From positions 62,001-126,000 of the IMG/VR virus record IMGVR_UViG_3300031521_001337: a stretch of 64,000 nucleotides of DNA; one strand, given 5' to 3'. The stretch's first letter is position 1; each line of letters begins with the position of its first letter. The position numbers and the translations under genes were made by a program. Below are positions 1,392 to 26,814 of the stretch, one piece after another. The notes under the pieces are model-generated. The model had not been told where the DNA came from and ran no database searches. It worked only from the letters and a program-made list of their open reading frames with translations.

Positions 1392-1701
1392 TCAAATAGC
1401 AATATTTGAAGAAGCTAAAGCTAGGTATTTAATCTATCAGAATGCTTTGAATTTCTGTAGTATGTGTTGGAGTTTGAATATCACTCTTAAAGATAAGGGT
1501 TATAAATCCTCAATTTTTGAGATAGATGATTTTCTTCCAACATTTACTTATGAAAACGTGTGTAAATTAGCATCACAGTATAATTTCGAAGAACCTAAGT
1601 GTCAGTTAATAACTATCACTTATTGGTGGGATGTACATAATGCTAAACCACGTATTAGTGCTTTTGATGCATTAGTGAATCAATTAAAAAGAGGGATATA
1701 G
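1375..1701 (+). CDS. hypothetical protein
   Basis: 108 aa ORF in the co-oriented gene run. Confidence 0.65.
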   Translation: MIPVNDQIAIFEEAKARYLIYQNALNFCSMCWSLNITLKDKGYKSSIFEIDDFLPTFTYENVCKLASQYNFEEPKCQLITITYWWDVHNAKPRISAFDALVNQLKRGI

Positions 1702-1752
1702 CTCAGCCGAAAAGAGCCTAGGGTCGGGAGTTTGAATCTCTCTATCCCTCCA
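1691..1752 (+). ncRNA. tRNA-like RNA lacking the anticodon arm
   Basis: Acceptor (G)AGGGATA/TATCCCT(C), D-arm GCTC-AGCCGAAAA-GAGC, only CTA then GGGTC variable loop, T-arm GGGAG-TTTGAAT-CTCTC. Confidence 0.75.
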
Positions 1753-6159: not shown

Positions 6160-6566
<407 letters not shown>

Positions 6567-14583: not shown

Positions 14584-14655
14584 GTTCGGGTCTTATAGCG
14601 GCTAGTAATCTGGGTTTTCATCCCAGCAAGCGGGGTTCGATTCCCCGTCCGAATA
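14584..14655 (+). tRNA. tRNA-Glu(TTC)
   Basis: Cloverleaf; CTGGG-TTTTCAT-CCCAG. Confidence 0.9.
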
Positions 14656-14676
14656 CAAAATATTGATAAATTAATT

Positions 14677-14895
14677 ATGATAGAAAAAAAATATTATTTA
14701 CTTAGAATAAGTAATCGTGAAACACCAAGACTTATTTTTAAGTCTTCAAGCATATCAGATCTTAATAAAGTTTCAAGATATTTAAAAGATGCTATAGAAG
14801 ATCATGAAATATTTTTTATTACTGAAAATGATAGTAAAGATGTAATTGAAGAATGGATTTCTGAAGAATTAATTTGTGAAATATTCAATAATTAA
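14677..14895 (+). CDS. hypothetical protein
   Basis: 72 aa ORF between tRNAs. Confidence 0.55.
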   Translation: MIEKKYYLLRISNRETPRLIFKSSSISDLNKVSRYLKDAIEDHEIFFITENDSKDVIEEWISEELICEIFNN

Positions 14896-14898
14896 AAT

Positions 14899-14971
14899 AT
14901 AGATGTGGCGCAGTTGGTAGCGTTCTTGCTTTGGGAGCAAGGGGTCGTGAGTTCGAGTCTCACCATCTATA
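14899..14971 (+). tRNA. tRNA-Pro(TGG)
   Basis: CTTGC-TTTGGGA-GCAAG. Confidence 0.93.
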
Positions 14972-14981
14972 CAAAATATAT

Positions 14982-15054
14982 CGCGAAGTGGTAGCAGTGG
15001 TAGCTCGCAAGGCTCATAACCTTGAGGTCGGGGGTTCAATTCCCTCCTTCGCAA
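14982..15054 (+). tRNA. initiator tRNA-fMet(CAT)
   Basis: C1:A72 mismatch; CAAGG-CTCATAA-CCTTG. Confidence 0.9.
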
Positions 15055-15060
15055 CTAAAT

Positions 15061-15149
15061 ATCCTCAACTCTGTGACCATAAATCGGCAATTGATAATGG
15101 TTCAAACAAAGCACAAGACAGCCGAAACTTGATTGCGGCAGAGAGGGAT
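15061..15149 (+). ncRNA. candidate three-way-junction RNA with kissing loops
   Basis: ATCCTC..CTCTG/CAGAG.AGGGAT closing stem; two hairpins with complementary loops GGC and GCC. Confidence 0.5.
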
Positions 15150-15157
15150 GTTAAAAT

Positions 15158-15236
15158 AAAGGGTGGTAGATAGCAATTATGTGTAATTCATAAACGTATA
15201 AGTTGATTAAAGTTCTACTATATACCCAACCCTTTT
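15158..15236 (+). ncRNA. candidate hairpin RNA or terminator
   Basis: AAAGGGT..GGTAGA/TCTACT..ACCCTTT pairing followed by T run. Confidence 0.35.
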
Positions 15237-15257
15237 TAAAACTTAAACAAATAGATA

Positions 15258-15473
15258 ATGGATTGGATTTTAATGATTTTAAACTTATACGCTTATTATT
15301 TGATAAGTAATAAGAGAATAATTGGCTTCATACTTGGAGCAATTGGAAGTATTCTTGGAATAATATTATTCTGGAATATGATTTCAATAGTTATAATGTA
15401 TTTAGCATTTACAGTTTTAAATATTAGAGGATTTTTAAAATGGAATAAAAAATTAAAAGAAGAAACAGTCTAG
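15258..15473 (+). CDS. small three-TM protein, possibly PnuC-like half-transporter
   Basis: W..L...Y.L...K..IGF..G...........Y......N..GF.KW pattern. Confidence 0.45.
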   Translation: MDWILMILNLYAYYLISNKRIIGFILGAIGSILGIILFWNMISIVIMYLAFTVLNIRGFLKWNKKLKEETV

Positions 15474-15474
15474 G

Positions 15475-15608
15475 TCCAGAGGGCTCTAATTGTATATGAG
15501 GGAAGTGACTCTGGAATTCCTCCGTATTTAAAGTATTGGTGAATGTTATATCTAGAATGGTAATTTATTATCGTCGATGATGTTTCTATAATATACAATC
15601 GCAATTAG
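15475..15608 (+). ncRNA. candidate pseudoknotted RNA
   Basis: TCCAGAG/CTCTGGA stem; loop ATTGTATAT is perfectly complementary to ATATACAAT at 15591. Confidence 0.45.
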
Positions 15609-15629
15609 TATATCTTTTTTAAAATATAA

Positions 15630-15792
15630 AATATTGAAATGTTGGCTTGGAAGCAGCAATCATCTAAAGAGTGGGACGAGACTACGTTGATAAACCAATT
15701 CAAGTTGGAATTTAATGTGGTAAGGTAAGTTGGAGGTCACCCCGTAACTGGTAAGGACTGAAATCCCTTTGGCGTAATAGCACATCAATATT
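15630..15792 (+). ncRNA. 23S rRNA H43-H44 (uL11-binding GTPase-associated centre) mimic with 99-nt insertion
   Basis: ATGTTGGCTTGGAAGCAGCAATCATCTAAAGAGT...GCGTAATAGCACA, closed by AATATTGA/TCAATATT. Confidence 0.75.
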
Positions 15793-15802
15793 TTTAAAAA
15801 TT

Positions 15803-15958
15803 AAATGAGTAACATCCGAGAATGGTCGGTGAGTCAGGTAAGAGGGGAACCCAATGCTGACTTAGAATGAGGAATTAAGTCCAGATATCCCTAACGAAAA
15901 GATGTAGGTGTAGTCCCGTGGATAACATGCGTGTAATTGTCCCTCCCGTTACTCATTT
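15803..15958 (+). ncRNA. candidate structured ncRNA (~156 nt)
   Basis: 11-bp closing stem AAATGAGTAAC/GTTACTCATTT; internal CCGA/TCGG and TGAGTCAG/CTGACTTA stems. Confidence 0.6.
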
Positions 15959-15965
15959 TTAAAAT

Positions 15966-16038
15966 GCTCCAGTAGCTCAGTGGATAGAGCATCGGTTTTC
16001 TAAACCGAGGGTCGCTGGTTCAAGTCCAGCTTGGAGTA
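15966..16038 (+). tRNA. tRNA-Arg(TCT)
   Basis: TCGGT-TTTCTAA-ACCGA. Confidence 0.95.
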
Positions 16039-16039
16039 C

Positions 16040-16525
16040 AACTAGGTTTATTTATTATTAGCTACGATAGAATAAACCATCAAAGATGGGGTTGTAGTCT
16101 TAACTTATAAAGTTATTGCCCATACCAATTAACAAAACTAACTAGGGTCGAGCTACATTTTGCCACTGTTAGTATTAGACTTAGAGATCAGAGGTAGCCG
16201 TGACTACTCTAAGTTGAACAAATAAAATCTCTTTAATTGAAGCAAAACGGTAACCAGGGGGAGACACCCAACCCAATAAGGGGTAAGGACGAAAGTTGAG
16301 TACGTAGGTTATAAACCATAGCAGTGGTTGAATGTTTTGGTAAATGTAGTTATGATATGGTTAGTGTTCGCAGAAAAGCCTTCGTTATGACCTAAGTCAA
16401 TATAATTATTCCACTCTGCTTAAAGTGAATAAAGAGATTTTTTATGCCTACTTATACCCTCAAGCTTATATCTTGTTGAAAGGTTATTTGGTGACAGCCT
16501 GGTTCAATCCCAGGAGTAGGTACAA
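16040..16525 (+). ncRNA. candidate large ornate ncRNA (~480 nt)
   Basis: Several long-range helices of 9-12 bp, some crossing; ends in a T-arm-like hairpin CCTGG-TTCAATC-CCAGG. Confidence 0.55.
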
Positions 16526-16526
16526 T

Positions 16527-17006
16527 ATGGAAAGAAGTAAAAATGAATTATTAGCAATTGAAAAAGGATATAAAATAACTATAAATGGTGATATTTTAAA
16601 TCCTAAAGAAAAAATTTTAACAGGAACTATTTATAATAAAAATTATAAAAAATTTAATATTAGATTAAATGAAAAACATATTCCAGTTAAAGTACATAGA
16701 TTACAAGCATATCAAAAATTTGGAGAAATTATTTTTAACGAAGATATAGTAGTTAGACATTTAGATGGTAACGGATTAAATAATTCTTGGGATAATATTG
16801 AAATTGGATCATATAGTGATAATATGATGGATAAACCTAAAGAAGAAAGAATTAGAATTGCATCTAATGCTAATAAAAAATATTCTGATGAATTAGTTTT
16901 AGAAATTAAAGCATACCGAAATTTAGGGCATACTTATAAAGAAATTATGGAAAAATATAATATTAGTAGTAAAGGAACCATTAGTAATATTATTAATAAT
17001 AGATAA
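16527..17006 (+). CDS. HNH homing endonuclease with C-terminal HTH
   Basis: KVHRL.AY...VVRHLDGNGLNN..DNIEIGSYSDN; ATG at 16527 preferred over GTG 16425, which overlaps structured RNA. Confidence 0.85.
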   Translation: MERSKNELLAIEKGYKITINGDILNPKEKILTGTIYNKNYKKFNIRLNEKHIPVKVHRLQAYQKFGEIIFNEDIVVRHLDGNGLNNSWDNIEIGSYSDNMMDKPKEERIRIASNANKKYSDELVLEIKAYRNLGHTYKEIMEKYNISSKGTISNIINNR

Positions 17007-17079
17007 GCCCGTATGGTGAAGTGGTTAACATTCGATTCTGCAAAAATCGCACGCCCAAGTTCGAATCTTGGTATGGGCT
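17007..17079 (+). tRNA. tRNA-Cys(GCA)
   Basis: CGATT-CTGCAAA-AATCG; U73. Confidence 0.92.
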
Positions 17080-17095
17080 CAAAATAAATAAAATT

Positions 17096-17311
17096 ATGAA
17101 ATCAGGAGATATAGTTAAAATGACTAAATCCTTTAAAAGAGGATTAATTGCAAATGATTGTAAAGATCATGTTGATGAATTTGGAAAGTGTATAGGTATA
17201 GTTGAAGATTTAGTATATCCTGATGGTGAAGGTGATGAATGGAATGTTAGATGGTTACCTTCTAAATTAAGATATGGTTATTCTCCAGAAGAACTTGAAA
17301 TAATTAAATAA
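17096..17311 (+). CDS. hypothetical protein (SH3/KOW-like)
   Basis: MKSGDIVKM...; start moved out of tRNA-Cys. Confidence 0.6.
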   Translation: MKSGDIVKMTKSFKRGLIANDCKDHVDEFGKCIGIVEDLVYPDGEGDEWNVRWLPSKLRYGYSPEELEIIK

Positions 17312-17476
17312 AACCAGTAGGAACAACTGAACGTAGATTGAGAAGGCCTAGGAACTTAATAACGAAAGTTTGATAGTTTATGCATACTTGTCTCGCGCAT
17401 CGTATTTGGCGCATGGGTATTATTAAGTTTTTACCAGTTTGGCATACAATCACCGTGGCACAAAAAACTTTAAATC

Positions 17477-17550
17477 GGGGTCTTAGCTCATTTGGCTAGA
17501 GCGATTGCTTTGCAAGCAATAGGTGGTGGGTTCGAAACCCACAGATTCCA
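17477..17550 (+). tRNA. tRNA-Ala(TGC)
   Basis: G3:U70; ATTGC-TTTGCAA-GCAAT. Confidence 0.95.
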
Positions 17551-17642
17551 CTCTTCGAAGAAGCTAATTGGTAAACAGCAATTAGTTATCATTGGAAAGC
17601 TATTAAGGATGTCGAAAGTCTAAGAATAGTTACTGTTTAACT

Positions 17643-17716
17643 GTTTGCGTAGCTCAGTTGGTTAGAGCACCAGCCTGATAAGTTGGGGGTCACAGGTTCA
17701 AGTCCTGTTGTGAACA
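17643..17716 (+). tRNA. tRNA-Ile(GAT)
   Basis: CCAGC-CTGATAA-GTTGG; GU-rich acceptor stem. Confidence 0.9.
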
Positions 17717-17774
17717 CAAAGTAGATATAAAATTAGTATTGGTTCTACAAGATAGTACTGTCTACAATACAACC

Positions 17775-17846
17775 GAGAGCATAGTTCAGTGGTGGAACGC
17801 TTCCCTTACATGGAAGATGTCGGGAGTTCAATTCTCTCTGCTCTTA
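17775..17846 (+). tRNA. tRNA-Val(TAC)
   Basis: CTTCC-CTTACAT-GGAAG. Confidence 0.92.
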
Positions 17847-17899
17847 CAAATAAATTAGGTAAAATTGGGATGATTACCCAAGTTAAATGAAGATGGAAA

Positions 17900-18469
17900 A
17901 TGATTTTAAAACAAGGAATGAAGGTTTTATTAAAACCTAAAGAATGGTATGATGAGAAAAAAGCAGATTTCTTGCCAATATTGACTAATGATATGGAACA
18001 ATATTTTGGTAAAGAACATATTATAAAATCTGTAAAAATTGGAGGATCTCAATTAAGAGGTGTTGAATTATTTAATATTGAAAGTGATTCTAAAGGTTGG
18101 TATTTCTCAATAGATATGGTTGATAAGTATTATGATATGCCAATTACAACTAATGGATATGATAGATTAGTAAGTATGTATAATACCATAGGATCTAGTT
18201 TAACTTCAGGTACTTCAAGTATGTCAAGTGCTTTAAGTATGTATGAACAACTTTCATTACAAGAATTGAGAGGTAGAATGAGAGGTACTACTGATTTTAG
18301 TGGATTATTAGGTTTTTCAAACAGTCTTTCAATTCACGTTAAAGCATTTATACAATATGTTGAGAAGTTTGTTCCATTTGCTTATGATGGAGTTGTAACT
18401 TATACAGATAATGAAAATAATTCATTTACTTTAACACAGTTATATGAGAGATTCACTACCAACAGTTAA
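17900..18469 (+). CDS. paralog array 2, member 1
   Basis: KQGMKVLLKPKEWY...DMEQYFGK...; C-terminal F..Y.EK...NNSFTL..LYE. Confidence 0.8.
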   Translation: MILKQGMKVLLKPKEWYDEKKADFLPILTNDMEQYFGKEHIIKSVKIGGSQLRGVELFNIESDSKGWYFSIDMVDKYYDMPITTNGYDRLVSMYNTIGSSLTSGTSSMSSALSMYEQLSLQELRGRMRGTTDFSGLLGFSNSLSIHVKAFIQYVEKFVPFAYDGVVTYTDNENNSFTLTQLYERFTTNS

Positions 18470-18902
18470 GTATAAAGTAGGACAATGTGTACATTTGAAA
18501 TCTAAAGATTGGTTTGATGTACATGACGATAGAGGTGATGTTAGATTAGGTTTAGCTAGTGATATGAGACCTTATTTTGGAACAATTCAAGTTATTACTC
18601 ATGTTGATACAAATTATTGTGGATATGTTTTAGCAGGTTGCAGTGGTGGTAGTGATAATGAATATACGTATACTGATCAAATGATTGATAATATAAAAAC
18701 TTCTGAATTAATACATAGACATGAAAATATAATTGATCCTGATCAATATTCATGGGATGTTATTACTCCAAATAAATTTCCTGAACATCTTGAAAAGAAT
18801 TATACTCCATTTCTTGATGGTGAAACTTTAACATTTACTGATAAAGATAATAATTCATTTACTTTAAAAGAAATATTTGATGAGTTCTTTAAAGAAGTAT
18901 AA
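18444..18902 (+). CDS. paralog array 2, member 2
   Basis: KYKVGQCVHLKSKDWF...DMRPYFG...EKNYTP...NNSFTLKEIF. Confidence 0.8.
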   Translation: MRDSLPTVKYKVGQCVHLKSKDWFDVHDDRGDVRLGLASDMRPYFGTIQVITHVDTNYCGYVLAGCSGGSDNEYTYTDQMIDNIKTSELIHRHENIIDPDQYSWDVITPNKFPEHLEKNYTPFLDGETLTFTDKDNNSFTLKEIFDEFFKEV

Positions 18903-19254
18903 AATTGGTGATGTTGTTAGACTAAAATCATTAGCTTGGTTTGATGAAATGATGGAAAATCATGTAGCTGTTGAAGGTGGATTAATTTATGATATGCGTC
19001 AGTTTTTTGGTAAAGAACAAGTAATTTCAAATAATGAAGCAGGTTATGCATATATACCTTTATATCACTTAGTAGATGATCCACGTCATTGGAATTTTAG
19101 TAATGATATGATTGAAGGAATAGCTTCATCTTTTCCTGAATATGTAGAAAAGAATTATACACCACTTATTGATGAAGGTGGATTGTATTTTATAAATGAT
19201 AATAATGATGCATATAGTTTAAAAGAAATATATGAGAGGTACAGAGCGATATAA
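18877..19254 (+). CDS. paralog array 2, member 3
   Basis: KYKIGDVVRLKSLAWF...DMRQFFGK...EKNYTP...NDAYSLKEIY. Confidence 0.8.
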   Translation: MMSSLKKYKIGDVVRLKSLAWFDEMMENHVAVEGGLIYDMRQFFGKEQVISNNEAGYAYIPLYHLVDDPRHWNFSNDMIEGIASSFPEYVEKNYTPLIDEGGLYFINDNNDAYSLKEIYERYRAI

Positions 19255-19768
19255 AGTAGGTGATAAAGTATTAATGCAGTCTTTAGAATGGTTTGAAGAT
19301 GCATTAAATGGACGAGGTCCAAGACCTCTTTTTGGAGTTGTTGAAAGCATGCGTAGATTGTTTGGAAAAGTTCAAACAATTACTATGAGTAGTCAATCTA
19401 TGAATGATGAGGATAAATATAAAATATCAGGAGCTAATGAATTTAATATCAGTAATGATATGATTAGAGGTTTACTTGAAGAATTTAGTCAAACAATAAC
19501 TCATGATGGTAGATCAGAATATGTTCATAATGATGTTCTTGCTAGTATGACACCATCGTCAGGAACTTATATCATTAATTATGGAGATGATCCAAGATTT
19601 GGGGGCACAGTAACAAGAACTAAATCATTTTTACAAGTATTAAAGGAGAATTACACTCCGACAATAATTGATGAAGAATTATTATTTGTTAATAAAGATA
19701 ATGAATCCTATACATTAGATGTTTTATATAATAAATTTCATAATACACCTTCAGGATTATTTGAATAA
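19232..19768 (+). CDS. paralog array 2, member 4
   Basis: RYKVGDKVLMQSLEWF...SMRRLFGK...KENYTP...NESYTLDVLY. Confidence 0.8.
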   Translation: MRGTERYKVGDKVLMQSLEWFEDALNGRGPRPLFGVVESMRRLFGKVQTITMSSQSMNDEDKYKISGANEFNISNDMIRGLLEEFSQTITHDGRSEYVHNDVLASMTPSSGTYIINYGDDPRFGGTVTRTKSFLQVLKENYTPTIIDEELLFVNKDNESYTLDVLYNKFHNTPSGLFE

Positions 19769-19788
19769 ACCACTTCGGTGGTTTCTTT
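19767..19788 (+). terminator. intrinsic terminator
   Basis: AAACCAC-TTCG-GTGGTTT then CTTT. Confidence 0.75.
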
Positions 19789-19818
19789 CTGCTATTAACA
19801 ATATTTAACTAAATATAT

Positions 19819-19849
19819 TTTGCACTTTCGAAAATTTTTTGTATCTTTG
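19819..19849 (+). promoter_or_regulatory. Bacteroidota sigmaA-type promoter
   Basis: TTTG-N19-TATCTTTG matches the -33/-7 consensus. Confidence 0.8.
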
Positions 19850-19874
19850 TACTATTAATATAATAGTTCAATTT

Positions 19875-20618
19875 ATGGAAAACAAATATTCAAAAGAAAA
19901 TTTAGAAAAAATTGTAAAAGAAAGTTATTCTTTTGCAGATGTGTGTAGATATTATGGGTTGCCTTTAACTGCTGGTAATTATGAAACAATTCAAACTAAG
20001 ATAAAAAAACATCAAATTAGCACAATTCATTTTAAAAGAAATTCTTCAAATGAAACTAAGAATGTGTACACTTTAGATACAATCTTTTGTAAAGATTCAG
20101 CATATACACAAACAAGTAAGTTAAGAGATAAATTATTAAAAAATAATCTAAAAGAACATAAATGTGAATGTTGTGATAATACTAAATGAATGGGAGAACC
20201 TATTCCATTAGAAACACACCACATAGATGGTATTAAAACTAATAATGAATTAAATAATCTTAAATTATTATGTCCAAACTGTCATGCTTTTACTGATAAT
20301 TATAAAGGTAAAAATGTTAAAGATAAAGTTATAGATGCATTATATTGTAATTCTTGTGGTAATACTATAACAAGTTCTTCTGTAAGTGGTTTATGTTTAA
20401 GTTGTTCTGCTAAACGAATAGCTAATGATTTTTACGATGAACTTGGTATAACTCGTGAATATTTAAAAACTTTAGTTCGCACAGAAACATTTATTAATAT
20501 TGGTAAATTATACAATAGATCAGATAATGCTATTAGAAAATGGTGTAAACATTTTAATATACCTTCTTCAAAGAAAGAAATAAATAGTTTGTCTGATGAT
20601 GAATGGGATAAAATATAA
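19875..20618 (+). CDS. HNH homing endonuclease with one in-frame TGA (20187..20189)
   Basis: ORFs 19839..20189 and 20190..20618 are one frame: CECCDNTK*MGEPIPLETHHIDG...N...NLKLLCPNCH. Confidence 0.8.
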
Positions 20619-20623
20619 TTTAA

Positions 20624-20696
20624 GGACTCTAAGCTAATCTGGTGAAAGCGTATGCCTGAAGAGCATGAGAGGTTGGATCAAAACCAACAGAGTCCA
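20624..20696 (+). tRNA. tRNA-Phe(GAA)
   Basis: TATGC-CTGAAGA-GCATG; atypical T-loop ATCAAAA. Confidence 0.88.
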
Positions 20697-20772
20697 CTTA
20701 CGGTTTAGGACCGTTGTTGTTTCGGCAACAAACCACTTGGTAGTGTCGCTACAACCAAGTGGTTATTTACAA

Positions 20773-20845
20773 GATCTGATAGCTCAACTGGTAGAGCATC
20801 GCCCTTTTAAGGCGGGGGTTCTGGGTTCAAATCCCAGTCAGATCA
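20773..20845 (+). tRNA. tRNA-Lys(TTT)
   Basis: TCGCC-CTTTTAA-GGCGG. Confidence 0.95.
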
Positions 20846-20861
20846 CAAAAAAAAAACAATC

Positions 20862-20950
20862 GGGGGTGTGGCGAAATTGGTAGCCGCAGCTAAATATAGG
20901 TTAGACCATAGCGGTCGTGAGACATGGGGGTTCGAAGCCCTCCGCCCCCA
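20862..20950 (+). ncRNA. tRNA-Leu-like RNA with a distorted, 7-nt-expanded anticodon arm
   Basis: Leu-type acceptor, D, variable and T arms; anticodon region GCTA-AATATAGGTTAGACCA-TAGC. Confidence 0.7.
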
Positions 20951-20956
20951 CTAAAT

Positions 20957-21035
20957 TCCCCAATGGCGTAATTGGCAGACGCGTATTCTTCGGAATATGT
21001 CGAGAGACATGTGGGTTCGAGTCCTCCTTGGGGGA
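20957..21035 (+). ncRNA. class II tRNA-like RNA with a UUCG tetraloop in place of the anticodon loop
   Basis: TATTC-TTCG-GAATA; D-arm GCG..CGC; variable arm GTC-GAGA-GAC; acceptor TCCCCAA/TTGGGGG. Confidence 0.7.
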
Positions 21036-21041
21036 GCAAAT

Positions 21042-21122
21042 ATGTCAGTATACAAGCGGTTAAAGTAGTTAGTCTCCAAAACTAATCCGAAAGGTTCGTG
21101 GGTTCAAATCCTACCTGATGTG
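21042..21122 (+). tRNA. tRNA-Trp(CCA) with long variable arm
   Basis: TTAGT-CTCCAAA-ACTAA; variable arm CC-GAAA-GG; G73. Confidence 0.85.
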
Positions 21123-21127
21123 CAAAT

Positions 21128-21210
21128 GCTTGAGTGGCGAAATGGTTAATACGCGTATGCCTTAGGAGCATATGTCGAAAGATGTGTCGGTTCGAGTCCG
21201 ACCTCGAGTA
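21128..21210 (+). tRNA. tRNA-Leu(TAG)
   Basis: TATGC-CTTAGGA-GCATA; class II. Confidence 0.95.
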
Positions 21211-21230
21211 CAAATATAAAAATAGATAAA

Positions 21231-21846
21231 ATGAAATGTTTAGATTATTTAAAAAGAATAGGAGTTAAATTAAATGGCCCTAATGTTCATAAAACTGCAA
21301 TGATTCAACTTTCAGTATGTGAAAGATATGACAAACGATGGAATAGTAAGAATTATTATAATCCTTACACTTTTCAATATGGTCGACGTAAAGAACATTC
21401 AGCTAAAAGTTGGAATCAGATTATAACTCCTCCGATTTTTCCTGATAAACCTAAATATAATTTTGAACGTAAAGAAATAGAAGTTGAAGGATTTAGATTT
21501 TTACAACCCGAGAGTTATATAGATGGTAAAACTTATTTTAAATATGAAGAAACTTCTTTTGTAAGAAAGAATTGGAGACATATTGAAAATGAATGTAAAT
21601 CATATTCTAAAAAATGTGAAGATTATTGGTATTTAAAAGGAATATTTGACGAAAATAACAATTAAGATGGCAGCTAAATGTGTAAAATTAGGATGTGTTC
21701 CTAGAATTAATAATTGGGGAATTAGTTGGTGTACCGAATGTGGTAAATTATTTCCTTTTAATCTAAATCACAAACCGATTAATAAGAATTTTCTTACAGA
21801 AGAATCTAAACTTATTTATGAGAATTATTTAAAATCAAATCAATAA
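21231..21846 (+). CDS. two hypothetical proteins (21231..21665, 21646..21846)
   Basis: ORFs between tRNA blocks. Confidence 0.6.
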
Positions 21847-21853
21847 ATTAAAT

Positions 21854-21943
21854 GGAAGAGTACTCAAGTGCTTTAAGAGGACGGTCTTGAAAATCGTTAG
21901 ATCGTGTAAAAGCGGTGCGTGGGTCGGAATCCCACTTCTTCCA
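21854..21943 (+). tRNA. tRNA-Ser(TGA)
   Basis: ACGGT-CTTGAAA-ATCGT; long variable arm; C19:G56 swap. Confidence 0.88.
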
Positions 21944-21956
21944 CAATAATTAAACT

Positions 21957-22042
21957 GGAAATAGTAACTTACGAGAAGTAAGGCTTGCCTGCTAAGCAAA
22001 GCGTTCGTTTAGGCGAATAGGAGTTGGAATCCTACATTTCCG
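21957..22042 (+). tRNA. tRNA-Ser(GCT), atypical D and T arms
   Basis: TTGC-CTGCTAA-GCAA; variable arm TTCG..CGAA; G73. Confidence 0.75.
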
Positions 22043-22061
22043 CAAATTAAAACATAAACAG

Positions 22062-23006
22062 ATGAAGATATTATTTATTGGTAATGGAATTTTTGGAGTT
22101 CCAGCATTAAAAAAATTACATGAAATTTATCAAGTTACAGTTATAACAACACCACCACGACGTTTCGGTAGAGTAGTACAAAATACACCTATTTATATTG
22201 CTGGTAAAGCTTTAGGTTGTTTAGTATATACTGCTAATGATATTAATGAACTTGAACATCGTATAATTAGTACTGATTTTGATTTAATTGTTGTTGCATC
22301 TTATGGACAAATAATTAAAATGAAAATACTTGATTCTGCTAAATATGGTGCAATTAATATTCATGGTTCATTATTACCGAAGTATAGAGGTGCTTCTTGT
22401 ATTCAAGCTGCTATTTTGAATAGAGATTCTGAAACAGGAGTTACATTTATTAAAATGAATGCTGCTGTAGATGCTGGAAGTATTATTACTCAACGTAAAA
22501 TGTATCTACCTGTAGGAATGGGATATATTATGCTTCTTGATCAATTATCAAACTTAGCTGCTGAAAATATTCTTCTAACAATCACTAAATATACTCGTGG
22601 AGTTATTTTAAGACCACAGATAGAAAGTGAAGCTACATATTGTTGTAAAATAACTAAAGATGATTGTTTACTTGATTTTAATAAAAATGTTGATGATGTA
22701 TATGCAAAAATGAAGGCATATGAATCGAATCACGGAGTATTCTTTTATTTACCAGATAACAATACTGAAGTTAAAATTAAAGATGCATGTATGTATACTG
22801 GACGTGTTAAAGGTGATTTCTTAGATGGAGAATTAATTTGTGTTGAAAATAATAAACTTTTTATAAATTGTAATAAAAGTAGTCTTCAGATTGTTTCATT
22901 ACAATTACCTAATAAAAAGGTTATGTCAGCTAGAGATTTTATTAATGGTCATAAGAAGTTAATCACACAATTTGCTGATTTACAAATAATTGTACATAAT
23001 GTATGA
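22062..23006 (+). CDS. fmt: methionyl-tRNA formyltransferase
   Basis: KILFIG...FG..AL..L, TTP.RR.GR, VASYG.I, INIHGSLLPKYRGA..IQ, ETGVT, VDAG.I; ~314 aa. Confidence 0.92.
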   Translation: MKILFIGNGIFGVPALKKLHEIYQVTVITTPPRRFGRVVQNTPIYIAGKALGCLVYTANDINELEHRIISTDFDLIVVASYGQIIKMKILDSAKYGAINIHGSLLPKYRGASCIQAAILNRDSETGVTFIKMNAAVDAGSIITQRKMYLPVGMGYIMLLDQLSNLAAENILLTITKYTRGVILRPQIESEATYCCKITKDDCLLDFNKNVDDVYAKMKAYESNHGVFFYLPDNNTEVKIKDACMYTGRVKGDFLDGELICVENNKLFINCNKSSLQIVSLQLPNKKVMSARDFINGHKKLITQFADLQIIVHNV

Positions 23007-23011
23007 AAAAT

Positions 23012-23095
23012 GGGATGTTATACCGTAGCTTATAGCGGGCCTGACTGTAACTTAGGTGTCTTCGGACTCGGGTGGTTTGACTCCACCACATCCCA
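23012..23095 (+). tRNA. tRNA-Tyr(GTA)
   Basis: CCTGA-CTGTAAC-TTAGG; variable arm GTC-TTCG-GAC. Confidence 0.88.
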
Positions 23096-23171
23096 CTAAA
23101 GTATTAGTCTTTAGACAATAAGCAAGATAAAAATAAGGAGTGGCACTTGCGTTCACCAATAATACTTTTCA

Positions 23172-23244
23172 CACGATGTAGCTCAGTTGGTAGAGTAGTC
23201 CTTTCATGCAGGACGGGTCAGGAGTTCAAATCTCTTCATCGTGA
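23172..23244 (+). tRNA. tRNA(CAT), elongator Met or lysidine Ile2
   Basis: GTCCT-TTCATGC-AGGAC; C1:G72 paired; unusual G37. Confidence 0.85.
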
Positions 23245-23262
23245 CAAACTAAACAAAATAAA

Positions 23263-23629
23263 ATGGATAAATTATTATTAGTACTTTCAATTCTTACATT
23301 ACCTGGAACATTGTTACTTATTACAGGTTTAGCAGATCTTTCTACTGTTAAAGAAGAGAAGGATAAAATAACGTATAATATTGCAGTATTTCTTAGATTT
23401 ACATCAATATTAACATTAGCATTAGCTATATTTGGAATTATTGCTTACATTTTAAATTAAAATTATGACTCTGTATAAAAAACTAAAGTGGACGTTCTTT
23501 GCAACACCACGACATGCAACTGAATGGGCTGAACAAAATGAAATGAGAATAACAGCTGCATTAGGAGTTGTTTTTGTAACATTTTTAATATTATTATTAT
23601 TTGGTCAACTTCCAACATGGGCTGGATAA
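23263..23629 (+). CDS. two small membrane proteins (23263..23460, 23465..23629)
   Basis: Hydrophobic ORFs; the second (54 aa) is below the ORF track cutoff. Confidence 0.55.
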
Positions 23630-23730
23630 ATGACGCTGCTCGATGAGTAGATGTCCTGGTGGGTCGCATTACCGAAATTGCGATAGTAGAACATGGGATA
23701 GCACTACTTAAAAAAGAGCCCTCCCACCAC

Positions 23731-23802
23731 GCCCGAGTAGCTCAGTGATAGAGCAATGGTATTGTAAACCATTTGTCGTCGGTTTGACCCCGACCTTGGG
23801 CT
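23731..23802 (+). tRNA. tRNA-Thr(TGT)
   Basis: ATGGT-ATTGTAA-ACCAT; A19:U56. Confidence 0.9.
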
Positions 23803-23819
23803 CTATTAAAAATAAAGAG

Positions 23820-24200
23820 ATGATTAAAAACATTATTAAAAGTTGGAAACATATTCCATATACATTGAAACATTATATAGCTTTTTTAAAACTTGAAAAG
23901 AAGTTATTAGGTTATTATAAGTATAAGTTTCATGATTTGGATAAAGTGTTAATGTATCTATTCATTCCTTTTATAGGAACACATCGAATTAAAATGATAC
24001 ATCGTAAGATTAATAGACATCATATTACATTTTATAAAACGAATTGTAATTATGAAGAAGCTATTATTGATTGGGAATGTTCAAGGTTTACAAAAGCTGA
24101 TAAACCTAGAACAGCAAGAGAAATTGTTAATGATAGACCTGATAAAAATTCAAGACACTATTATGAACTAGTAAGACAATTAAATAAATTTAATTTATAA
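23820..24200 (+). CDS. HD-like His-rich hypothetical protein
   Basis: HD..K, H...N.HH, E.IIDWECSR motifs; start moved out of tRNA-Thr. Confidence 0.6.
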   Translation: MIKNIIKSWKHIPYTLKHYIAFLKLEKKLLGYYKYKFHDLDKVLMYLFIPFIGTHRIKMIHRKINRHHITFYKTNCNYEEAIIDWECSRFTKADKPRTAREIVNDRPDKNSRHYYELVRQLNKFNL

Positions 24201-24202
24201 TT

Positions 24203-24765
24203 ATGGATAAAAATCAAAGTGATAATATTTGTCCTAATTGTGGGGCTATATTAAATGCAAATACAGCGTGTACAGATGGTACTAAAGCTGGACCTGGTGA
24301 TATTTCAATATGTTTGTATTGTCAATCAGTTAATATATTATCAGAACATATGACAACTCTTAAACTTTCACAAGAAGAATATGACGCTCTAGATGCTGAT
24401 ATAAGAGCTAAAATTGAAAAAGTCATAGAAGTAGCTAAGGCAATGAACATTAAATACAAAGAATAATGACAGTAAGAGAATTATATGAGTATTTAGGAGG
24501 ATTACCTTATAATAGTCAACATTGGGATGATGAAGTTGTTATTCCTTTAGACTATCCTTCTATGGGTAGTCGTATATCAGAACCTATTCTTCGAACTAAT
24601 TTTGGTTTTGATTGGGATTCTAGTAAATGTTTTATAGTAACAGAAGCCAAACTTGTAAAGAGTTTTAAAGCTCCTGGAACAGGTGAACCTTTAGAAGTAA
24701 TTGAATTAAAGAATTTGACTAAACCGTCGAATCCTAAAGATAAAAGTGTTGGAGAAACTTCGTAA
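24203..24765 (+). CDS. two hypothetical proteins (24203..24466 Zn-finger CPNC/CLYC, 24466..24765)
   Basis: Coupled ORFs. Confidence 0.6.
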
Positions 24766-24818
24766 GAAGACTGATCTAGTCTCGGTAGGCACGTGCACAG
24801 TGATCCTACCCGTACCAT

Positions 24819-24892
24819 GCAGTAATAGCTCAGTTGATCAGAGCACTCGCCTTCCAAGCCTGGGGTCGTGGGTTTGAACCCCACTTACTGCT
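24819..24892 (+). tRNA. tRNA-Gly(TCC)
   Basis: CTTCCAA loop; U73; anticodon stem has two mismatches. Confidence 0.8.
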
Positions 24893-24899
24893 CTTACAT

Positions 24900-24973
24900 G
24901 GTGACATTAGCTCAATTGGTAGAGCGCTGGTTTGTGGTGCCGGTCGTTGCGGGTTCGATCCCCGTGTGTCACA
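24900..24973 (+). tRNA. tRNA-His(GTG)
   Basis: CTGGT-TTGTGGT-GCCGG; encoded G-1, but A73. Confidence 0.88.
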
Positions 24974-24996
24974 CAAGAACAATTAAATTTTAAATT

Positions 24997-25362
24997 ATGT
25001 ATTACAAAGCAATTAAAAGAAATTCAGATGGTCGTGAATTGTATTCAGAAGTATTATGTCTTATTAAAGTAAAAGATTATGTGAAAGCAACACGTAATTA
25101 TACAGAAGTTATTCCAATTATTCCAGAAGTAATTGAAATTGTACCTGAAACAATGCGACAAATGGGTTGGAGGAGACAATCATTTTATTTAGATGATACT
25201 CAAGGAAATCAACACAATTTTTTCAATTGTGATAATTTTAGTCATTTAGCACAAATCTTTCGAGATAAAAAAGTTTTTGTGTATCATTCTCGTAGAGGTG
25301 GAGAAATCCGTCGCTCTATAGTTGGTACAATTGATGAAACCAATACAGAACATTGGTTTTAA
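24997..25362 (+). CDS. hypothetical protein
   Basis: 121 aa ORF. Confidence 0.65.
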   Translation: MYYKAIKRNSDGRELYSEVLCLIKVKDYVKATRNYTEVIPIIPEVIEIVPETMRQMGWRRQSFYLDDTQGNQHNFFNCDNFSHLAQIFRDKKVFVYHSRRGGEIRRSIVGTIDETNTEHWF

Positions 25363-25373
25363 CATGGTATAAA

Positions 25374-25394
25374 GGTTCGTAGCTCAGTGGTTAG
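25374..25394 (+). pseudogene. 5' fragment of a tRNA gene
   Basis: GGTTCGTAGCTCAGTGGTTAG with no anticodon or T arm following. Confidence 0.5.
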
Positions 25395-25417
25395 TAAACA
25401 AGTAAAAATTAGTAAAA

Positions 25418-25595
25418 ATGGATGAAATGAGAGTGTGTAAAACACATGGTGAAACAACATTTAGATCCAAATGAAAAAGATTTTGGAATATCAGCAAAAG
25501 GATATACTAGAGCATGAGAAAAAGTTAAAGAAGAATTAGATAAATGTATTATGGTCTGTGCTAATTGTCACAGAGAAATACATTCAGAAGAATAA
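25418..25595 (+). pseudogene. internally deleted HNH endonuclease remnant
   Basis: MDEMRVCKTHGETT joined out of frame to HLDPNEKDFGISAKGYTRA*EKVKEELDKCIMVCANCHREIH. Confidence 0.75.
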
Positions 25596-25596
25596 T

Positions 25597-25683
25597 GTAC
25601 ACGTTGCCTTAGTTGGTCGACAGGTCCAGGCTGTTAACCTGGTGAATAATATTCCACCGCAGGTTCGAATCCTGCCGTGTACG
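25597..25683 (+). tRNA. tRNA-Asn(GTT) with long variable arm
   Basis: CCAGG-CTGTTAA-CCTGG; GAAT-AAT-ATTC variable stem; G73. Confidence 0.85.
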
Positions 25684-25692
25684 CTTCTATAT

Positions 25693-25763
25693 TGACCGAT
25701 GGTGTAATGGTAGCACACATCCCTTTGACGGATGTCGCCCAGGTTCGAGTCCTGGTTGGTCAA
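25693..25763 (+). tRNA. tRNA-Gln(TTG)
   Basis: CATCC-CTTTGAC-GGATG; U1:A72. Confidence 0.93.
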
Positions 25764-25785
25764 CTAAATTATAAATTATAAAATA

Positions 25786-26064
25786 ATGAATGAATACGGT
25801 GAAGATTCAGAGTATAAATGGTATTTCTTTACAGGTTGTCTTATGGAATGTGCTAATGCAAGTTGTTGTCTTTATGGTGGTAATATTGGCTATGATAAAT
25901 TTAGTTTTAGTGATATGATAAAAGTAAATGGAACAAGAGGTTATCCTGGACAATGTTCAGCAACTGTTGGACTACTTATTATTGATGAACATTTAGATCA
26001 TCCTAAATTTATAGAATGGATGAATAACTTACCTGATGAAATAAGAAATAATTTACCTTTTTAA
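25786..26064 (+). CDS. Cys-containing hypothetical protein
   Basis: 92 aa; ends FIEW..LP.EIRNNLPF. Confidence 0.7.
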   Translation: MNEYGEDSEYKWYFFTGCLMECANASCCLYGGNIGYDKFSFSDMIKVNGTRGYPGQCSATVGLLIIDEHLDHPKFIEWMNNLPDEIRNNLPF

Positions 26065-26074
26065 AAATAGAATA

Positions 26075-26422
26075 ATGAGATTAGTAACAGTAAATTTAGA
26101 TATAGATCCTGAATCTGGACTTGAAGAAGAATTTGATGATGTACCACAATCAGAATGGTGATTTTGGACATGTTATTACAAAAGTGAACCCGATGGACTT
26201 TGTTGTGTATATGGTTATCAAGATCCAGATCAACCACATCAGTTAATATATAGTCAACAAATTGAAGTTTGTGGTCGATATGTTAGAGGTTTTGGTTCAT
26301 GTTGTTATGATCATGAATTATTTGCATTAACTAATAATACAGATAATTACGAATTTATATGTTGGTTTGAAAAACTAAGTTATGAAATTAGAAAAGAATT
26401 AATGATAATATTACCTTTTTAA
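26075..26422 (+). CDS. paralog of 25786..26064 with one in-frame TGA (26159..26161); absent from the ORF track
   Basis: MRLVTV...QSEW*FWTCYY...LCCVYG...FICWFEKLSYEIRKELMIILPF*. Confidence 0.7.
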
Positions 26423-26576
26423 TAAAAATATGATTAAAAAATTAATTAAATGGTTTAAGAAACCAAAGAAACAAAAGACTTGTTTTGCTGATGCAGATGG
26501 TATGTCACATGCAGGATGTGCTTCTATGCCTTCTTGTGATAAATGTTCTTGTTACAGATATAAACTGTAGTAAAAT

Positions 26577-26668
26577 GTCTAAGTGGCGAAGTTTGGCTGA
26601 AACGCATAAGACTTAAAATCTTATACCCTTTGTGGTGAACACCGTGGGTTCGATCCCCACCTTAGATA
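26577..26668 (+). tRNA. tRNA-Leu(TAA)
   Basis: TAAGA-CTTAAAA-TCTTA; class II. Confidence 0.92.
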
Positions 26669-26735
26669 CTTAAAAATACTAGTAAATCTTAATTTATTTA
26701 AGTTGGCTTCGTGGGTTAAAAGGAATCCACACTAT

Positions 26736-26809
26736 AGCTTGTTAGTTCAGTTGATTAGAATGCCGCCCTGTCACGGCGGAGGTCGCCGGTTTGAGCCCGG
26801 TACAAGCTG
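26736..26809 (+). tRNA. tRNA-Asp(GTC)
   Basis: CCGCC-CTGTCAC-GGCGG; G73; A19:U56. Confidence 0.93.
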
Positions 26810-26814
26810 CTTAG

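What the first reader, a model, noticed from the sequence alone, without database searches (positions are those of the whole stretch)
20957..21035. tRNA-like RNA whose anticodon loop is a C(UUCG)G tetraloop
A 5-bp stem is capped by the ultrastable UUCG loop exactly where the anticodon should be, in a class II body adjacent to the previous mimic. A precise stable cap looks selected. Along with 1691..1752 and 20862..20950, it makes three independent solutions for a tRNA shape without decoding capacity.
Basis: partly seen in the sequence, partly recalled or inferred. Interest (0 to 1): 0.75.

Follow-up and report, generated by a model that had tools for sequence, protein, structure and literature searches.

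The report
Phage tRNA-shaped RNA without an anticodon
A large uncultured phage carries, inside its tRNA gene array, a copy of a leucine tRNA whose anticodon loop has been replaced by a closed four-base cap. It keeps the tRNA shape but cannot read a codon, and whether it is a working mimic or a decaying gene copy is still open.

Summary
Window 20957-21035 folds as a class II cloverleaf whose anticodon position is a 5-bp stem (20984-88/20993-97) closed by UUCG (20989-92). ARAGORN calls it 'tRNA-???'. The Rfam tRNA model gives 28.2 bits, against a threshold of 29.

It descends from phage tRNA-Leu(UAG): the D arm, the GUC-GAGA-GAC variable arm and the T loop are all of that type.

It lies in a 274-bp three-gene cassette (20850-23). 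The order is X1, a second anticodon-less Leu-like RNA; then this element, X2; then an unusual tRNA-Trp. Some relatives lack the cassette precisely.

A relative whose Fmt is 67% identical carries the same cassette. Its X2 is 93-94% identical, all differences fall in the T arm and the 3' acceptor strand, and its T stem is fully paired. Like all 24 tRNAs of the array, X2 is followed by N73-C74, so 'C74 absent' is a register artefact.

No other example turned up in viral, metagenome or genome scans. No expression data could be obtained.

Best reading (about 0.45): a retained, tRNA-processed, non-decoding tRNA body that acts by binding a tRNA-recognising protein. Main rival (about 0.35): a young pseudogene carried along with tRNA-Trp. 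The anti-defence decoy function is untested.

The parts
20957..21035 (+). X2: tRNA-Leu-derived tRNA-like RNA with a UUCG-capped stem in place of the anticodon arm (Rfam register; ARAGORN register is 20956-21037)
20957..20963 (+). Acceptor 5' strand UCCCCAA. It pairs with 21028-21034. The upstream U20956 can pair with A21035 to give an 8-bp helix in the window allele.
20966..20982 (+). D arm: stem GCGU/ACGC and loop AAUUGGCAG with G18 G19. This is the tRNA-Leu signature.
20984..20997 (+). Hairpin at the anticodon position: 5 bp (UAUUC/GAAUA) closed by UUCG at 20989-20992. The arm is 14 nt instead of 17.
20999..21008 (+). Class II variable arm GUC-GAGA-GAC, identical to that of the tRNA-Leu(UAG) of Lactobacillus phage Lpa804
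21011..21027 (+). T arm GUGGG-UUCGAGU-CCUCC. The U.C mismatch and the G.U pair are specific to the window clade. Four of the five differences from relative L061 fall here (21013, 21021, 21024, 21026).
21028..21037 (+). Acceptor 3' strand UUGGGGG, followed by A-G-C. The G run is 5 in the window allele and 4 in L084/L061. Reading G73-C74 fits the rule of the whole array.
20862..20950 (+). X1: neighbouring Leu-like class II body. Its anticodon arm is a closed, bulged hairpin: GCUA[AAUAUA]GGU-UAG-ACC[A]UAGC.
21042..21122 (+). tRNA-Trp(CCA) with A1-U72, G73 and a 12-nt variable region. It is the third member of the cassette and the only Trp tRNA of the genome.
20850..21123 (+). The cassette X1-X2-tRNA-Trp. 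It is absent as a unit in the trio-less allele, where 20849 joins 21124 (TTAAAT between them in run X11; the L063 allele has its own spacer).
21128..21210 (+). tRNA-Leu(UAG), the closest paralog in the window (58/79 identical to X2)

Best explanation
X2 is a paralog of a phage tRNA-Leu(UAG) that has lost decoding. Its 17-nt anticodon arm has become a 14-nt hairpin closed by UUCG. All the parts that make a tRNA fold and get processed are kept.

Inferred life cycle (none of these steps is shown):
1. It is transcribed within the polycistronic array Phe-...-Lys-X1-X2-Trp-Leu.
2. RNase P cuts at its 5' end (leader ...AAAU).
3. It is trimmed to N73-C74 and completed to CCA by the host enzyme, like its neighbours.
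4. It folds into the L shape with an intact elbow.

With no anticodon, and with the Leu discriminator not conserved (A or G), it is probably neither a decoder nor a reliable Leu acceptor.

The most likely mode of action is as a non-decoding tRNA body that occupies a protein which docks on the tRNA body (elbow, acceptor end, long variable arm). That protein could be a host tRNA-directed nuclease or toxin, which finds nothing to cut in a closed tetraloop, or a tRNA-processing or tRNA-charging enzyme. X1 would act alongside it. The pair travels with tRNA-Trp as a gain/loss cassette.

Shown: structure, origin, cassette, retention in a second lineage. Inferred: transcription, maturation, protein binding, any anti-defence role.
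For: - The cloverleaf has every tertiary-contact position intact: U8, A14, G18 G19, G53-C61 and a UUCGAGU T loop. The only lesion is at the anticodon loop.
- The cloverleaf energy is within 2.7-3.6 kcal/mol of the minimum free energy.
- The 3' flank follows the N73-C74-A/T rule shared by all 24 tRNA calls of the array. The 5' leader ends in AAAU, like many of its neighbours in the array.
- The same cassette is present in L061, whose neighbouring Fmt is 67% identical in protein and 78% in DNA. There X2 is 93-94% identical, within the 81-100% range of the genuine orthologous tRNAs, while the structured spacer 100 nt upstream is only about 60% identical.
- X2's differences keep or improve pairing: G.U to A-U, G-C to G.U, U.C to U-A, and U1.G72 to U1-A72.
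- X1 shows a fully compensatory A-U to G-C change and a structure-extending indel in its closed arm.
- Three separate tRNA-shaped elements in one genome have all lost the anticodon loop specifically.
- Precedent: T4 carries two tandem stable RNAs, rnaC and rnaD, in its tRNA cluster. rnaC has a tRNA-type T arm and acceptor.
- Counter-defence-type and translation genes lie nearby: NAMPT, Fmt and tmRNA.
Against: - There is no expression or maturation evidence. The only runs holding the sequence are probably DNA.
- The capped helix never varies in the three haplotypes, so there is no covariation for it. X2 has no two-sided compensatory change.
- The two lineages are mosaics with segments of 91-95% identity. 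The cassette is mobile, so recent transfer plus hitch-hiking with the invariant tRNA-Trp could explain the conservation.
- The window clade has a T-stem mismatch and an extra G in the acceptor strand, which look like early decay.
- The discriminator is not conserved.
- No further example was found in 39 related viral records or in three collection scans.
- No phage-encoded partner was found: no CCA-adding enzyme, Ro60, RtcB or tRNA-synthetase core.
Confidence: 0.45

Rival explanations
1. X2 is a young tRNA-Leu pseudogene. A duplicate lost 3 nt of its anticodon arm and happens to refold as a capped hairpin. It persists because it lies between selected neighbours in a tightly packed array and moves with tRNA-Trp as one cassette.
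For: - The score falls just under the Rfam threshold.
- The window clade has a T-stem mismatch and a variable G run.
- The discriminator differs between alleles.
- There is no two-sided covariation in X2.
- Background identity between the lineages reaches 91-95% in places, and the cassette is gained or lost as a unit.
- tRNA-Leu genes are visibly in flux in this clade. There are forms of 75-77 nt without a variable arm and forms with extra linkers.
- UNCG hairpins are not enriched in the genome.
Against: - Apart from the T-stem U.C mismatch and the extra G in the acceptor strand of the window clade, every helix and tertiary position other than the anticodon loop is intact. The 7-bp acceptor differs from every Leu tRNA found, yet it is perfectly paired in L061/L084.
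- The anticodon stem carries a compensated G-C to U-A difference from the paralog.
- Five changes fall in the last 24 nt and none in the first 56, which is not the even scatter expected of neutral decay.
- The neighbouring X1 shows compensatory change.
- Phage genomes usually delete useless DNA.
Confidence: 0.35
2. X2 is a cis-acting processing signal (a 't-element'). Together with X1, it is kept only as an RNase P / 3'-end processing site that sets the ends and stoichiometry of neighbouring RNAs in the precursor. The excised RNA has no function of its own.
For: Spacers are only 5-6 nt, and each unit ends N73-C74-(A/U)AAU. The 3' end of each unit is therefore defined by cleavage at the next one.
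Against: - RNase P cuts tRNA-Trp at its own 5' end without X2.
- The trio-less allele joins Lys directly to Leu and needs no spacer elements.
- The only unit that depends on X2 is X1, which is itself non-decoding.
Confidence: 0.08
3. X2 is a non-ribosomal amino-acid carrier. It is charged by a synthetase that ignores the anticodon (LeuRS or SerRS) and donates the amino acid to a transferase instead of the ribosome.
For: It has a class II body with the Leu-type D arm and variable arm. The window allele can be read with A73. From general knowledge, LeuRS and SerRS do not read the anticodon.
Against: - The discriminator is G in L084/L061 and A only in one register of the window allele.
- U1-A72/U1.G72 and the C-rich acceptor are unlike Leu tRNAs.
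- The 3-bp variable stem is short for Ser identity.
- No synthetase was found in the genome. Aminoacyl-tRNA transferases were not searched for.
Confidence: 0.04

Closest known systems
Class II tRNA-Leu(UAG) of phages and bacteria
   Same: D arm GCG-AAUUGG-AGACGC, variable arm GUC-GNRA-GAC, T loop UUCGAGU, and overall cloverleaf. The best covariance-model and BLAST hits are tRNA-Leu(UAG) genes, including that of Lactobacillus phage Lpa804, which has the identical variable arm.
   Different: The anticodon arm is 14 nt with a 4-nt UUCG cap instead of 17 nt with CUUAGGA. The acceptor is U1-A72/U1.G72 and C-rich. The discriminator is not fixed as A73.
Bacteriophage T4 rnaC / rnaD (species 1 and species 2 stable RNAs)
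   Same: Both are two tandem non-tRNA RNAs inside a phage tRNA cluster that also holds a homing endonuclease gene. They are separated from their neighbours by a few nucleotides. rnaC ends in a tRNA-type T arm and acceptor helix. Their function is unknown.
   Different: There is no sequence similarity. The T4 RNAs are 119-139 nt and are not full cloverleaves, whereas X2 is a complete class II cloverleaf lacking only the anticodon loop.
Pseudo-tRNAs and 'undetermined' tRNA calls, e.g. Bacillus cereus tRNA-Other
   Same: A tRNA-derived gene that does not work in translation. In B. cereus, deleting it still has phenotypes (PMC3399842, abstract).
   Different: tRNA-Other is chromosomal and flanks an island. 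X2 is phage-borne, and its lesion is a clean replacement of the loop by a tetraloop.
Phage tRNAs with altered anticodon loops that escape anticodon nucleases (T5; PMC10264068)
   Same: A phage tRNA array shaped by tRNA-targeting defences, with changes concentrated in the anticodon loop.
   Different: Those tRNAs still decode. X2 cannot, so it could act only as a competitor, not as a replacement.
YrlA / Y RNA-like tRNA mimics (Rfam RF02553)
   Same: Non-decoding RNAs with a tRNA-like elbow. Weak YrlA-like modules occur in relatives of this phage.
   Different: YrlA is circularly permuted and carries a Ro-binding stem. X2 is not permuted, gets no YrlA hit, and the genome has no TROVE/Ro60 gene.
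mascRNA and gammaherpesvirus 68 tRNA-like RNAs (from general knowledge)
   Same: tRNA-shaped, processed by the tRNA machinery, not used for decoding.
   Different: They are eukaryotic or viral Pol III products with no homology to X2. No mascRNA-model match covered X2 in the Rfam scan of 20600-21250; the only mascRNA hit there was tRNA-Lys.

Membership tests
Canonical tRNA (Rfam RF00005) | Cloverleaf with a 7-bp acceptor, a D arm with G18 G19, and a T arm with U54 U55 C56 and G53-C61 | tested here: met
   Full-length alignment to the model; all arms are present.
Canonical tRNA (Rfam RF00005) | 7-nt anticodon loop with U33 and a 3-nt anticodon | tested here: not met
   The loop is 4 nt (UUCG), or 6 nt if the C-G pair is opened. 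ARAGORN reports a 2-nt 'anticodon'.
Canonical tRNA (Rfam RF00005) | Score at or above the curated gathering threshold (29 bits) | tested here: not met
   28.2 bits. It was not listed in the whole-window gathering scan.
Class II tRNA-Leu | Long variable arm and the Leu-type D arm | tested here: met
   14-nt variable region with a 3-bp stem and a GAGA loop. The D loop is AAUUGGCAG. The nearest relatives are tRNA-Leu(UAG) genes.
Class II tRNA-Leu | A73 discriminator (main LeuRS determinant, from general knowledge) | tested here: inconclusive
   A73 appears only in one register of the window allele. It is G73 in L084 and L061, and in the register that fits the array's C74 rule.
Class II tRNA-Leu | Aminoacylation with leucine | not testable with these tools
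   Needs a biochemical assay.
tRNA pseudogene | Function-destroying lesion | tested here: met
   Loss of the anticodon loop.
tRNA pseudogene | Neutral evolution: helix-breaking changes, evenly scattered | tested here: inconclusive
   Five differences from L061, all in the last 24 nt. Three of four stem changes keep pairing and one pair is mismatched in the window clade. There are only three haplotypes, on a mosaic background.
tRNA pseudogene | No stable RNA product | not testable with these tools
   No RNA run could be listed or laid.
T4-type stable RNAs of tRNA clusters (rnaC/rnaD) | Tandem position inside a phage tRNA cluster, with a tRNA-like acceptor and T arm | tested here: met
   X1-X2 lie between tRNA-Lys and tRNA-Trp. 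T4 rnaD-rnaC lie after tRNA-Arg, and rnaC has a tRNA-type T arm.
T4-type stable RNAs of tRNA clusters (rnaC/rnaD) | Sequence or structural homology to rnaC/rnaD | tested here: not met
   The T4 RNAs are 119-139 nt with different folds, and neither matches the Rfam tRNA model. rnaC gives only a sub-threshold tRNA-Sec match (17.5 bits, threshold 47), whereas X2 aligns end to end to the tRNA model. X2 was not aligned directly to rnaC or rnaD.
YrlA / Y RNA-like | Permuted tRNA-like module plus a Ro-binding helix, with a Ro60 (TROVE) partner | tested here: not met
   No YrlA match at X2 or elsewhere in the genome above noise, and no TROVE gene.
tmRNA tRNA-like domain | Acceptor with G3.U70, no anticodon arm, linked to a tag reading frame | tested here: not met
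   X2 has C3-G70 and does have an arm. The permuted-tmRNA match is noise (16.7 bits). The phage has a separate complete tmRNA at 6160-6566.

The most novel reading that the evidence does not exclude
X2, together with X1 and the armless element at 1691-1752, is an RNA-based counter-defence. It would be an uncleavable tRNA body that docks on a host tRNA-directed immune enzyme and blocks or titrates it, so protecting the decoding tRNAs. Candidate enzymes are an anticodon nuclease specific for long-arm tRNAs, or a toxin acting on the acceptor end. This would be the first natural tRNA decoy made by capping the anticodon stem.
Probability: 0.15. Interest if true: 0.85.

Novelty: new variant of a known kind. 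Interest (0 to 1): 0.5.

Why it matters
Phage tRNA arrays are now seen as part of the arms race with tRNA-cutting and tRNA-modifying defences. Every documented phage answer so far is a tRNA that still decodes.

A tRNA body that keeps every feature needed for folding and processing, but has its anticodon loop sealed, would be a different solution: mimicry by RNA. It would also give a function to the 'undetermined' tRNA calls that annotation pipelines discard.

It would be a natural counterpart of the engineered tRNA scaffolds used to stabilise RNAs. It would also bear on the still-unknown function of the T4 species 1 and 2 RNAs.

If it proves to be a pseudogene instead, the locus is still a clear snapshot of birth, remodelling and death of tRNA-Leu copies, and of cassette-wise gain and loss, inside a phage tRNA array.

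Tried and rejected
- **Near and distant BLAST against GenBank phages**. No copy of X2 was found, only ordinary tRNA-Leu genes.
- **Exact and degenerate pattern scans.** Scans of IMG/VR, JGI metagenomes and GTDB genomes returned only near-identical strains. The other hits were chance matches in GC-rich coding DNA.
- **Covariance model of X2 over 39 related viral records and further Logan/ENA contigs**. The hits are normal tRNAs with 7-nt loops.
  - One apparent second case (L119:6322-6402) aligned with no insertion in the loop. On reading it proved to have a normal 5-bp stem and a 7-nt loop (UCUAGGU) behind an 8-nt linker, so it was rejected as an analogue.
- **Flanking-protein searches.** The 144-aa ORF downstream has no relatives beyond the strain, no family and no Atlas lead. 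The HNH ORF led to unrelated phage tRNA clusters. DNA polymerase relatives are on short contigs or too distant.
- **Expression.** RNA-labelled runs holding the sequence are probably DNA and hold the L061-type allele. No transcriptomic run could be listed.
- **Partner enzymes in the genome.** No CCA-adding enzyme, Ro60/TROVE, RtcB, or class I / class IIb synthetase core, and no YrlA.
- **Gene conversion of the T arm from a paralog.** No donor was found.
- **Genome-wide TGA recoding** as an explanation for the split HNH gene. Large genes are intact in the standard code.
- **Literature searches.** No described phage tRNA-like RNA with a tetraloop anticodon arm was found.

Full report
**Setting.** The window is bases 62001-126000 of a 213,486-bp IMG/VR virus record rated complete by CheckV. 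The genome has about 30% G+C, and the genes in the window lie on the + strand. It carries a tmRNA (6160-6566) and 24 ARAGORN tRNA calls, including X1 and X2, between 14.5 and 26.8 kb. Between them they cover all 20 amino acids. The array is interspersed with HNH endonuclease genes and a methionyl-tRNA formyltransferase gene. The finding lies in the tightest part of the array. There, tRNA-Lys, X1 (20862-20950), X2 (the finding), tRNA-Trp and tRNA-Leu(UAG) follow one another, with 4-6 nt between the four units from X1 to tRNA-Leu(UAG) and about 15 nt between tRNA-Lys and X1.

**The observation.** X2 reads as a complete class II cloverleaf.
- The acceptor is UCCCCAA/UUGGGGG, followed by U8 and G9.
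- The D stem is 4 bp, around AAUUGGCAG.
- The variable arm is GUC-GAGA-GAC.
- The T stem is 5 bp, around UUCGAGU.
- In place of the 17-nt anticodon arm there are 14 nt: UAUUC, UUCG, GAAUA.

The Rfam tRNA model aligns end to end with three loop positions deleted. It scores 28.2 bits against a threshold of 29. ARAGORN reports an undetermined tRNA with a two-base 'anticodon'. The cloverleaf lies 2.7-3.6 kcal/mol above the computed minimum, which is ordinary for an unmodified AU-rich tRNA transcript. The capped hairpin alone is worth only about -1.5 kcal/mol, so the cap is what lets this AU-rich helix close. UNCG-capped hairpins are not enriched in the genome as a whole.

**The ends.** Every one of the 24 tRNA calls is followed by C at position 74 and then A or T. 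Many leaders end in AAAU. X2 fits this rule if its discriminator is G21036 and C74 is C21037. The relatives L084 and L061 have one G fewer in the 3' strand. That gives U1-A72, G73 and C74 in a normal 7-bp register. In the window allele the extra G can be taken up by pairing U20956 with A21035, which makes an 8-bp helix. The discriminator is not a conserved A, which argues against a conserved leucine identity.

**Origin.** The closest sequence among all tRNAs collected is the window's own tRNA-Leu(UAG), at 58 of 79 positions. A covariance model built from X2 finds tRNA-Leu(UAG) genes of other phages as its best hits. Each needs a 3-nt insertion in the loop. The only BLAST hit in GenBank phages is the tRNA-Leu(UAG) of Lactobacillus phage Lpa804. 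It shares the GUAAUUGGCAG D region and the identical GUCGAGAGAC variable arm, but has a normal UUUAGAA loop. X2 is therefore a remodelled tRNA-Leu(UAG).

**Relatives and the cassette.** Many metagenome contigs carry the array at 98-100% identity.

A Logan contig, L061, comes from a phage whose Fmt is 67% identical in protein. It carries the same order, Lys-X1-X2-Trp.

Other contigs of that lineage join tRNA-Lys directly to tRNA-Leu(UAG). These are L063 and a contig in run X11 that joins 20849 to 21124. The 274-bp trio is therefore gained or lost as a unit.

Between the window and L061, identities in the local array are as follows:

| Element | Identity |
|---|---|
| tRNA-Trp | 100% |
| X2 | 93-94% |
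| X1 | 88% |
| tRNA-Lys | 81% |
| Three-hairpin RNA just upstream | about 60%, with covarying stems |

All five X2 differences lie in the last 24 nt. Three are in the T stem, one is in the T loop, and one is the G-run length. L061 has a fully paired T stem, whereas the window clade has U.C and G.U pairs. One run adds a C-to-U change in the D loop.

**How strong is the case for selection?** It is moderate.

In favour:
- The tertiary-contact positions are intact.
- The acceptor is perfectly paired yet unlike that of any Leu tRNA found.
- The changes are pairing-compatible.
- X1 shows a compensatory A-U to G-C change and an extra C-G pair in its closed arm.
- Three elements in one genome all lack the anticodon loop specifically.

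Against:
- The capped helix never varies, so it offers no covariation.
- Only three haplotypes exist.
- The two phages are mosaics with 75-95% DNA identity by segment.
- A mobile cassette carrying an invariant tRNA-Trp could carry passengers.
- The window clade's mismatch and extra G look like early wear.

**What could not be learned.** No transcriptomic run could be listed. The RNA-labelled runs that hold the sequence are probably DNA. The genome encodes no CCA-adding enzyme, Ro60, RtcB or synthetase core, so any maturation depends on the host. The adjacent 144-aa ORF is an orphan. No other tetraloop-capped tRNA-like gene was found in 39 related viral records or in IMG/VR, JGI or GTDB pattern scans. 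One apparent analogue in L119 was rejected after it was read by eye.

**Mechanism.** The best-supported reading is a non-decoding tRNA body. It would be made and matured like its neighbours and would act through proteins that recognise the tRNA body rather than the anticodon. A closed UUCG cap offers no single-stranded loop to a nuclease and no codon pairing to the ribosome. Whether the partner is a host defence enzyme is inference only.

The main rival is a young pseudogene. Two minor rivals are a cis processing signal and an anticodon-independent amino-acid carrier. The trio-less allele argues against the first, and the unfixed discriminator against the second.

**Comparison and verdict.** X2 works like, and descends from, a class II tRNA-Leu. 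It fails the defining test of a tRNA, which is a 7-nt anticodon loop. Its nearest functional analogue is the pair of stable RNAs in the T4 tRNA cluster, rnaC and rnaD. They share the tandem position and, for rnaC, a tRNA-type T arm and acceptor, but no homology. It is not a YrlA, a tmRNA domain or a mascRNA-type RNA.

I rate it a new variant of a known kind: a tRNA-derived, non-decoding RNA in a phage tRNA cluster. Interest is moderate (0.5).

Noticed in passing
window 20862-20950; L061:464-556: X1, called tRNA-Tyr(AUA) or tRNA-Ile(AAU) by ARAGORN, is a Leu-like class II body. Its anticodon arm is a closed, bulged hairpin: basal stem GCUA/UAGC, internal loop AAUAUA, inner hairpin GGU-UAG-ACC. 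The relative has GCUG/CAGC (a compensatory change) and a 4-bp inner hairpin, so X1 too has no 7-nt anticodon loop.
   Followed up: partly
window 20698-20772; L061:305-381; L063:139-215; L076:261-455: A three-hairpin RNA lies between tRNA-Phe and tRNA-Lys (z = -4.6 and -5.2). The two lineages are about 60% identical, with covarying stems and conserved loops (UAGGAC, a UNCG tetraloop, UGUCGCUA). It has no significant Rfam match. In L076, about 120 nt of extra sequence is inserted within the first hairpin.
   Followed up: partly
window 21042-21122 and 25598-25682: tRNA-Trp(CCA) has Trp-type A1-U72 and G73 but a 12-nt variable region with a CC-GAAA-GG hairpin. tRNA-Asn(GUU) carries a 12-nt extra arm. 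Normally short-armed tRNAs are expanded in this phage.
   Followed up: partly
window, all 24 tRNA calls (14584-26810): Every tRNA is followed by C74 and then A/T. The array encodes the first C of CCA but not the rest, and the genome has no CCA-adding enzyme gene.
   Followed up: yes
window 19839-20618: An HNH endonuclease gene is split by a single in-frame TGA at 20187-20189. The two halves match the two halves of one PHROG family. Large genes are intact in the standard code, so this is not genome-wide recoding.
   Followed up: partly
window 22062-23006: A full-length methionyl-tRNA formyltransferase gene (Formyl_trans_N + C) lies inside the tRNA array. Its best named cellular relatives (35-40% identity) are mostly Patescibacteria.
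   Followed up: partly
window 1691-1752: A third tRNA-shaped element: an 8-bp acceptor GAGGGAUA/UAUCCCUC, a D arm and a T arm (GGGAG/CUCUC), but no anticodon arm. It is followed by CA and a U-rich tract. Neither ARAGORN nor Rfam calls it.
   Followed up: no
window 6160-6566 and 10247-11677: A phage-encoded tmRNA (tag GNKTISFARTAFMAAA) and a nicotinamide phosphoribosyltransferase gene lie upstream of the tRNA array.
   Followed up: no
L119:6114-6245 and 6322-6402; L123:~11290-11420 and 11528-11622: More distant relatives carry weak YrlA-like permuted tRNA modules (29.7 bits, threshold 69). They also carry Leu-like bodies whose normal arm (loop UCUAGGU) sits behind an 8-nt linker or an extra helix.
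   Followed up: partly
L120:9442-9515; L122:6061-6136; L061:743-819; L076:538-614; L123:6304-6378: Relatives carry a tRNA with a CUA anticodon (amber-suppressor type). Several have a 75-77-nt tRNA-Leu(UAG) without the long variable arm. tRNA-Leu genes are unusually plastic in this clade.
   Followed up: no
genome C1:30014-30087, minus strand (outside the window): ARAGORN calls a 74-nt tRNA with anticodon UCA on the strand opposite to that of the window's genes. Its T loop is atypical, so it is probably a false call.
   Followed up: no
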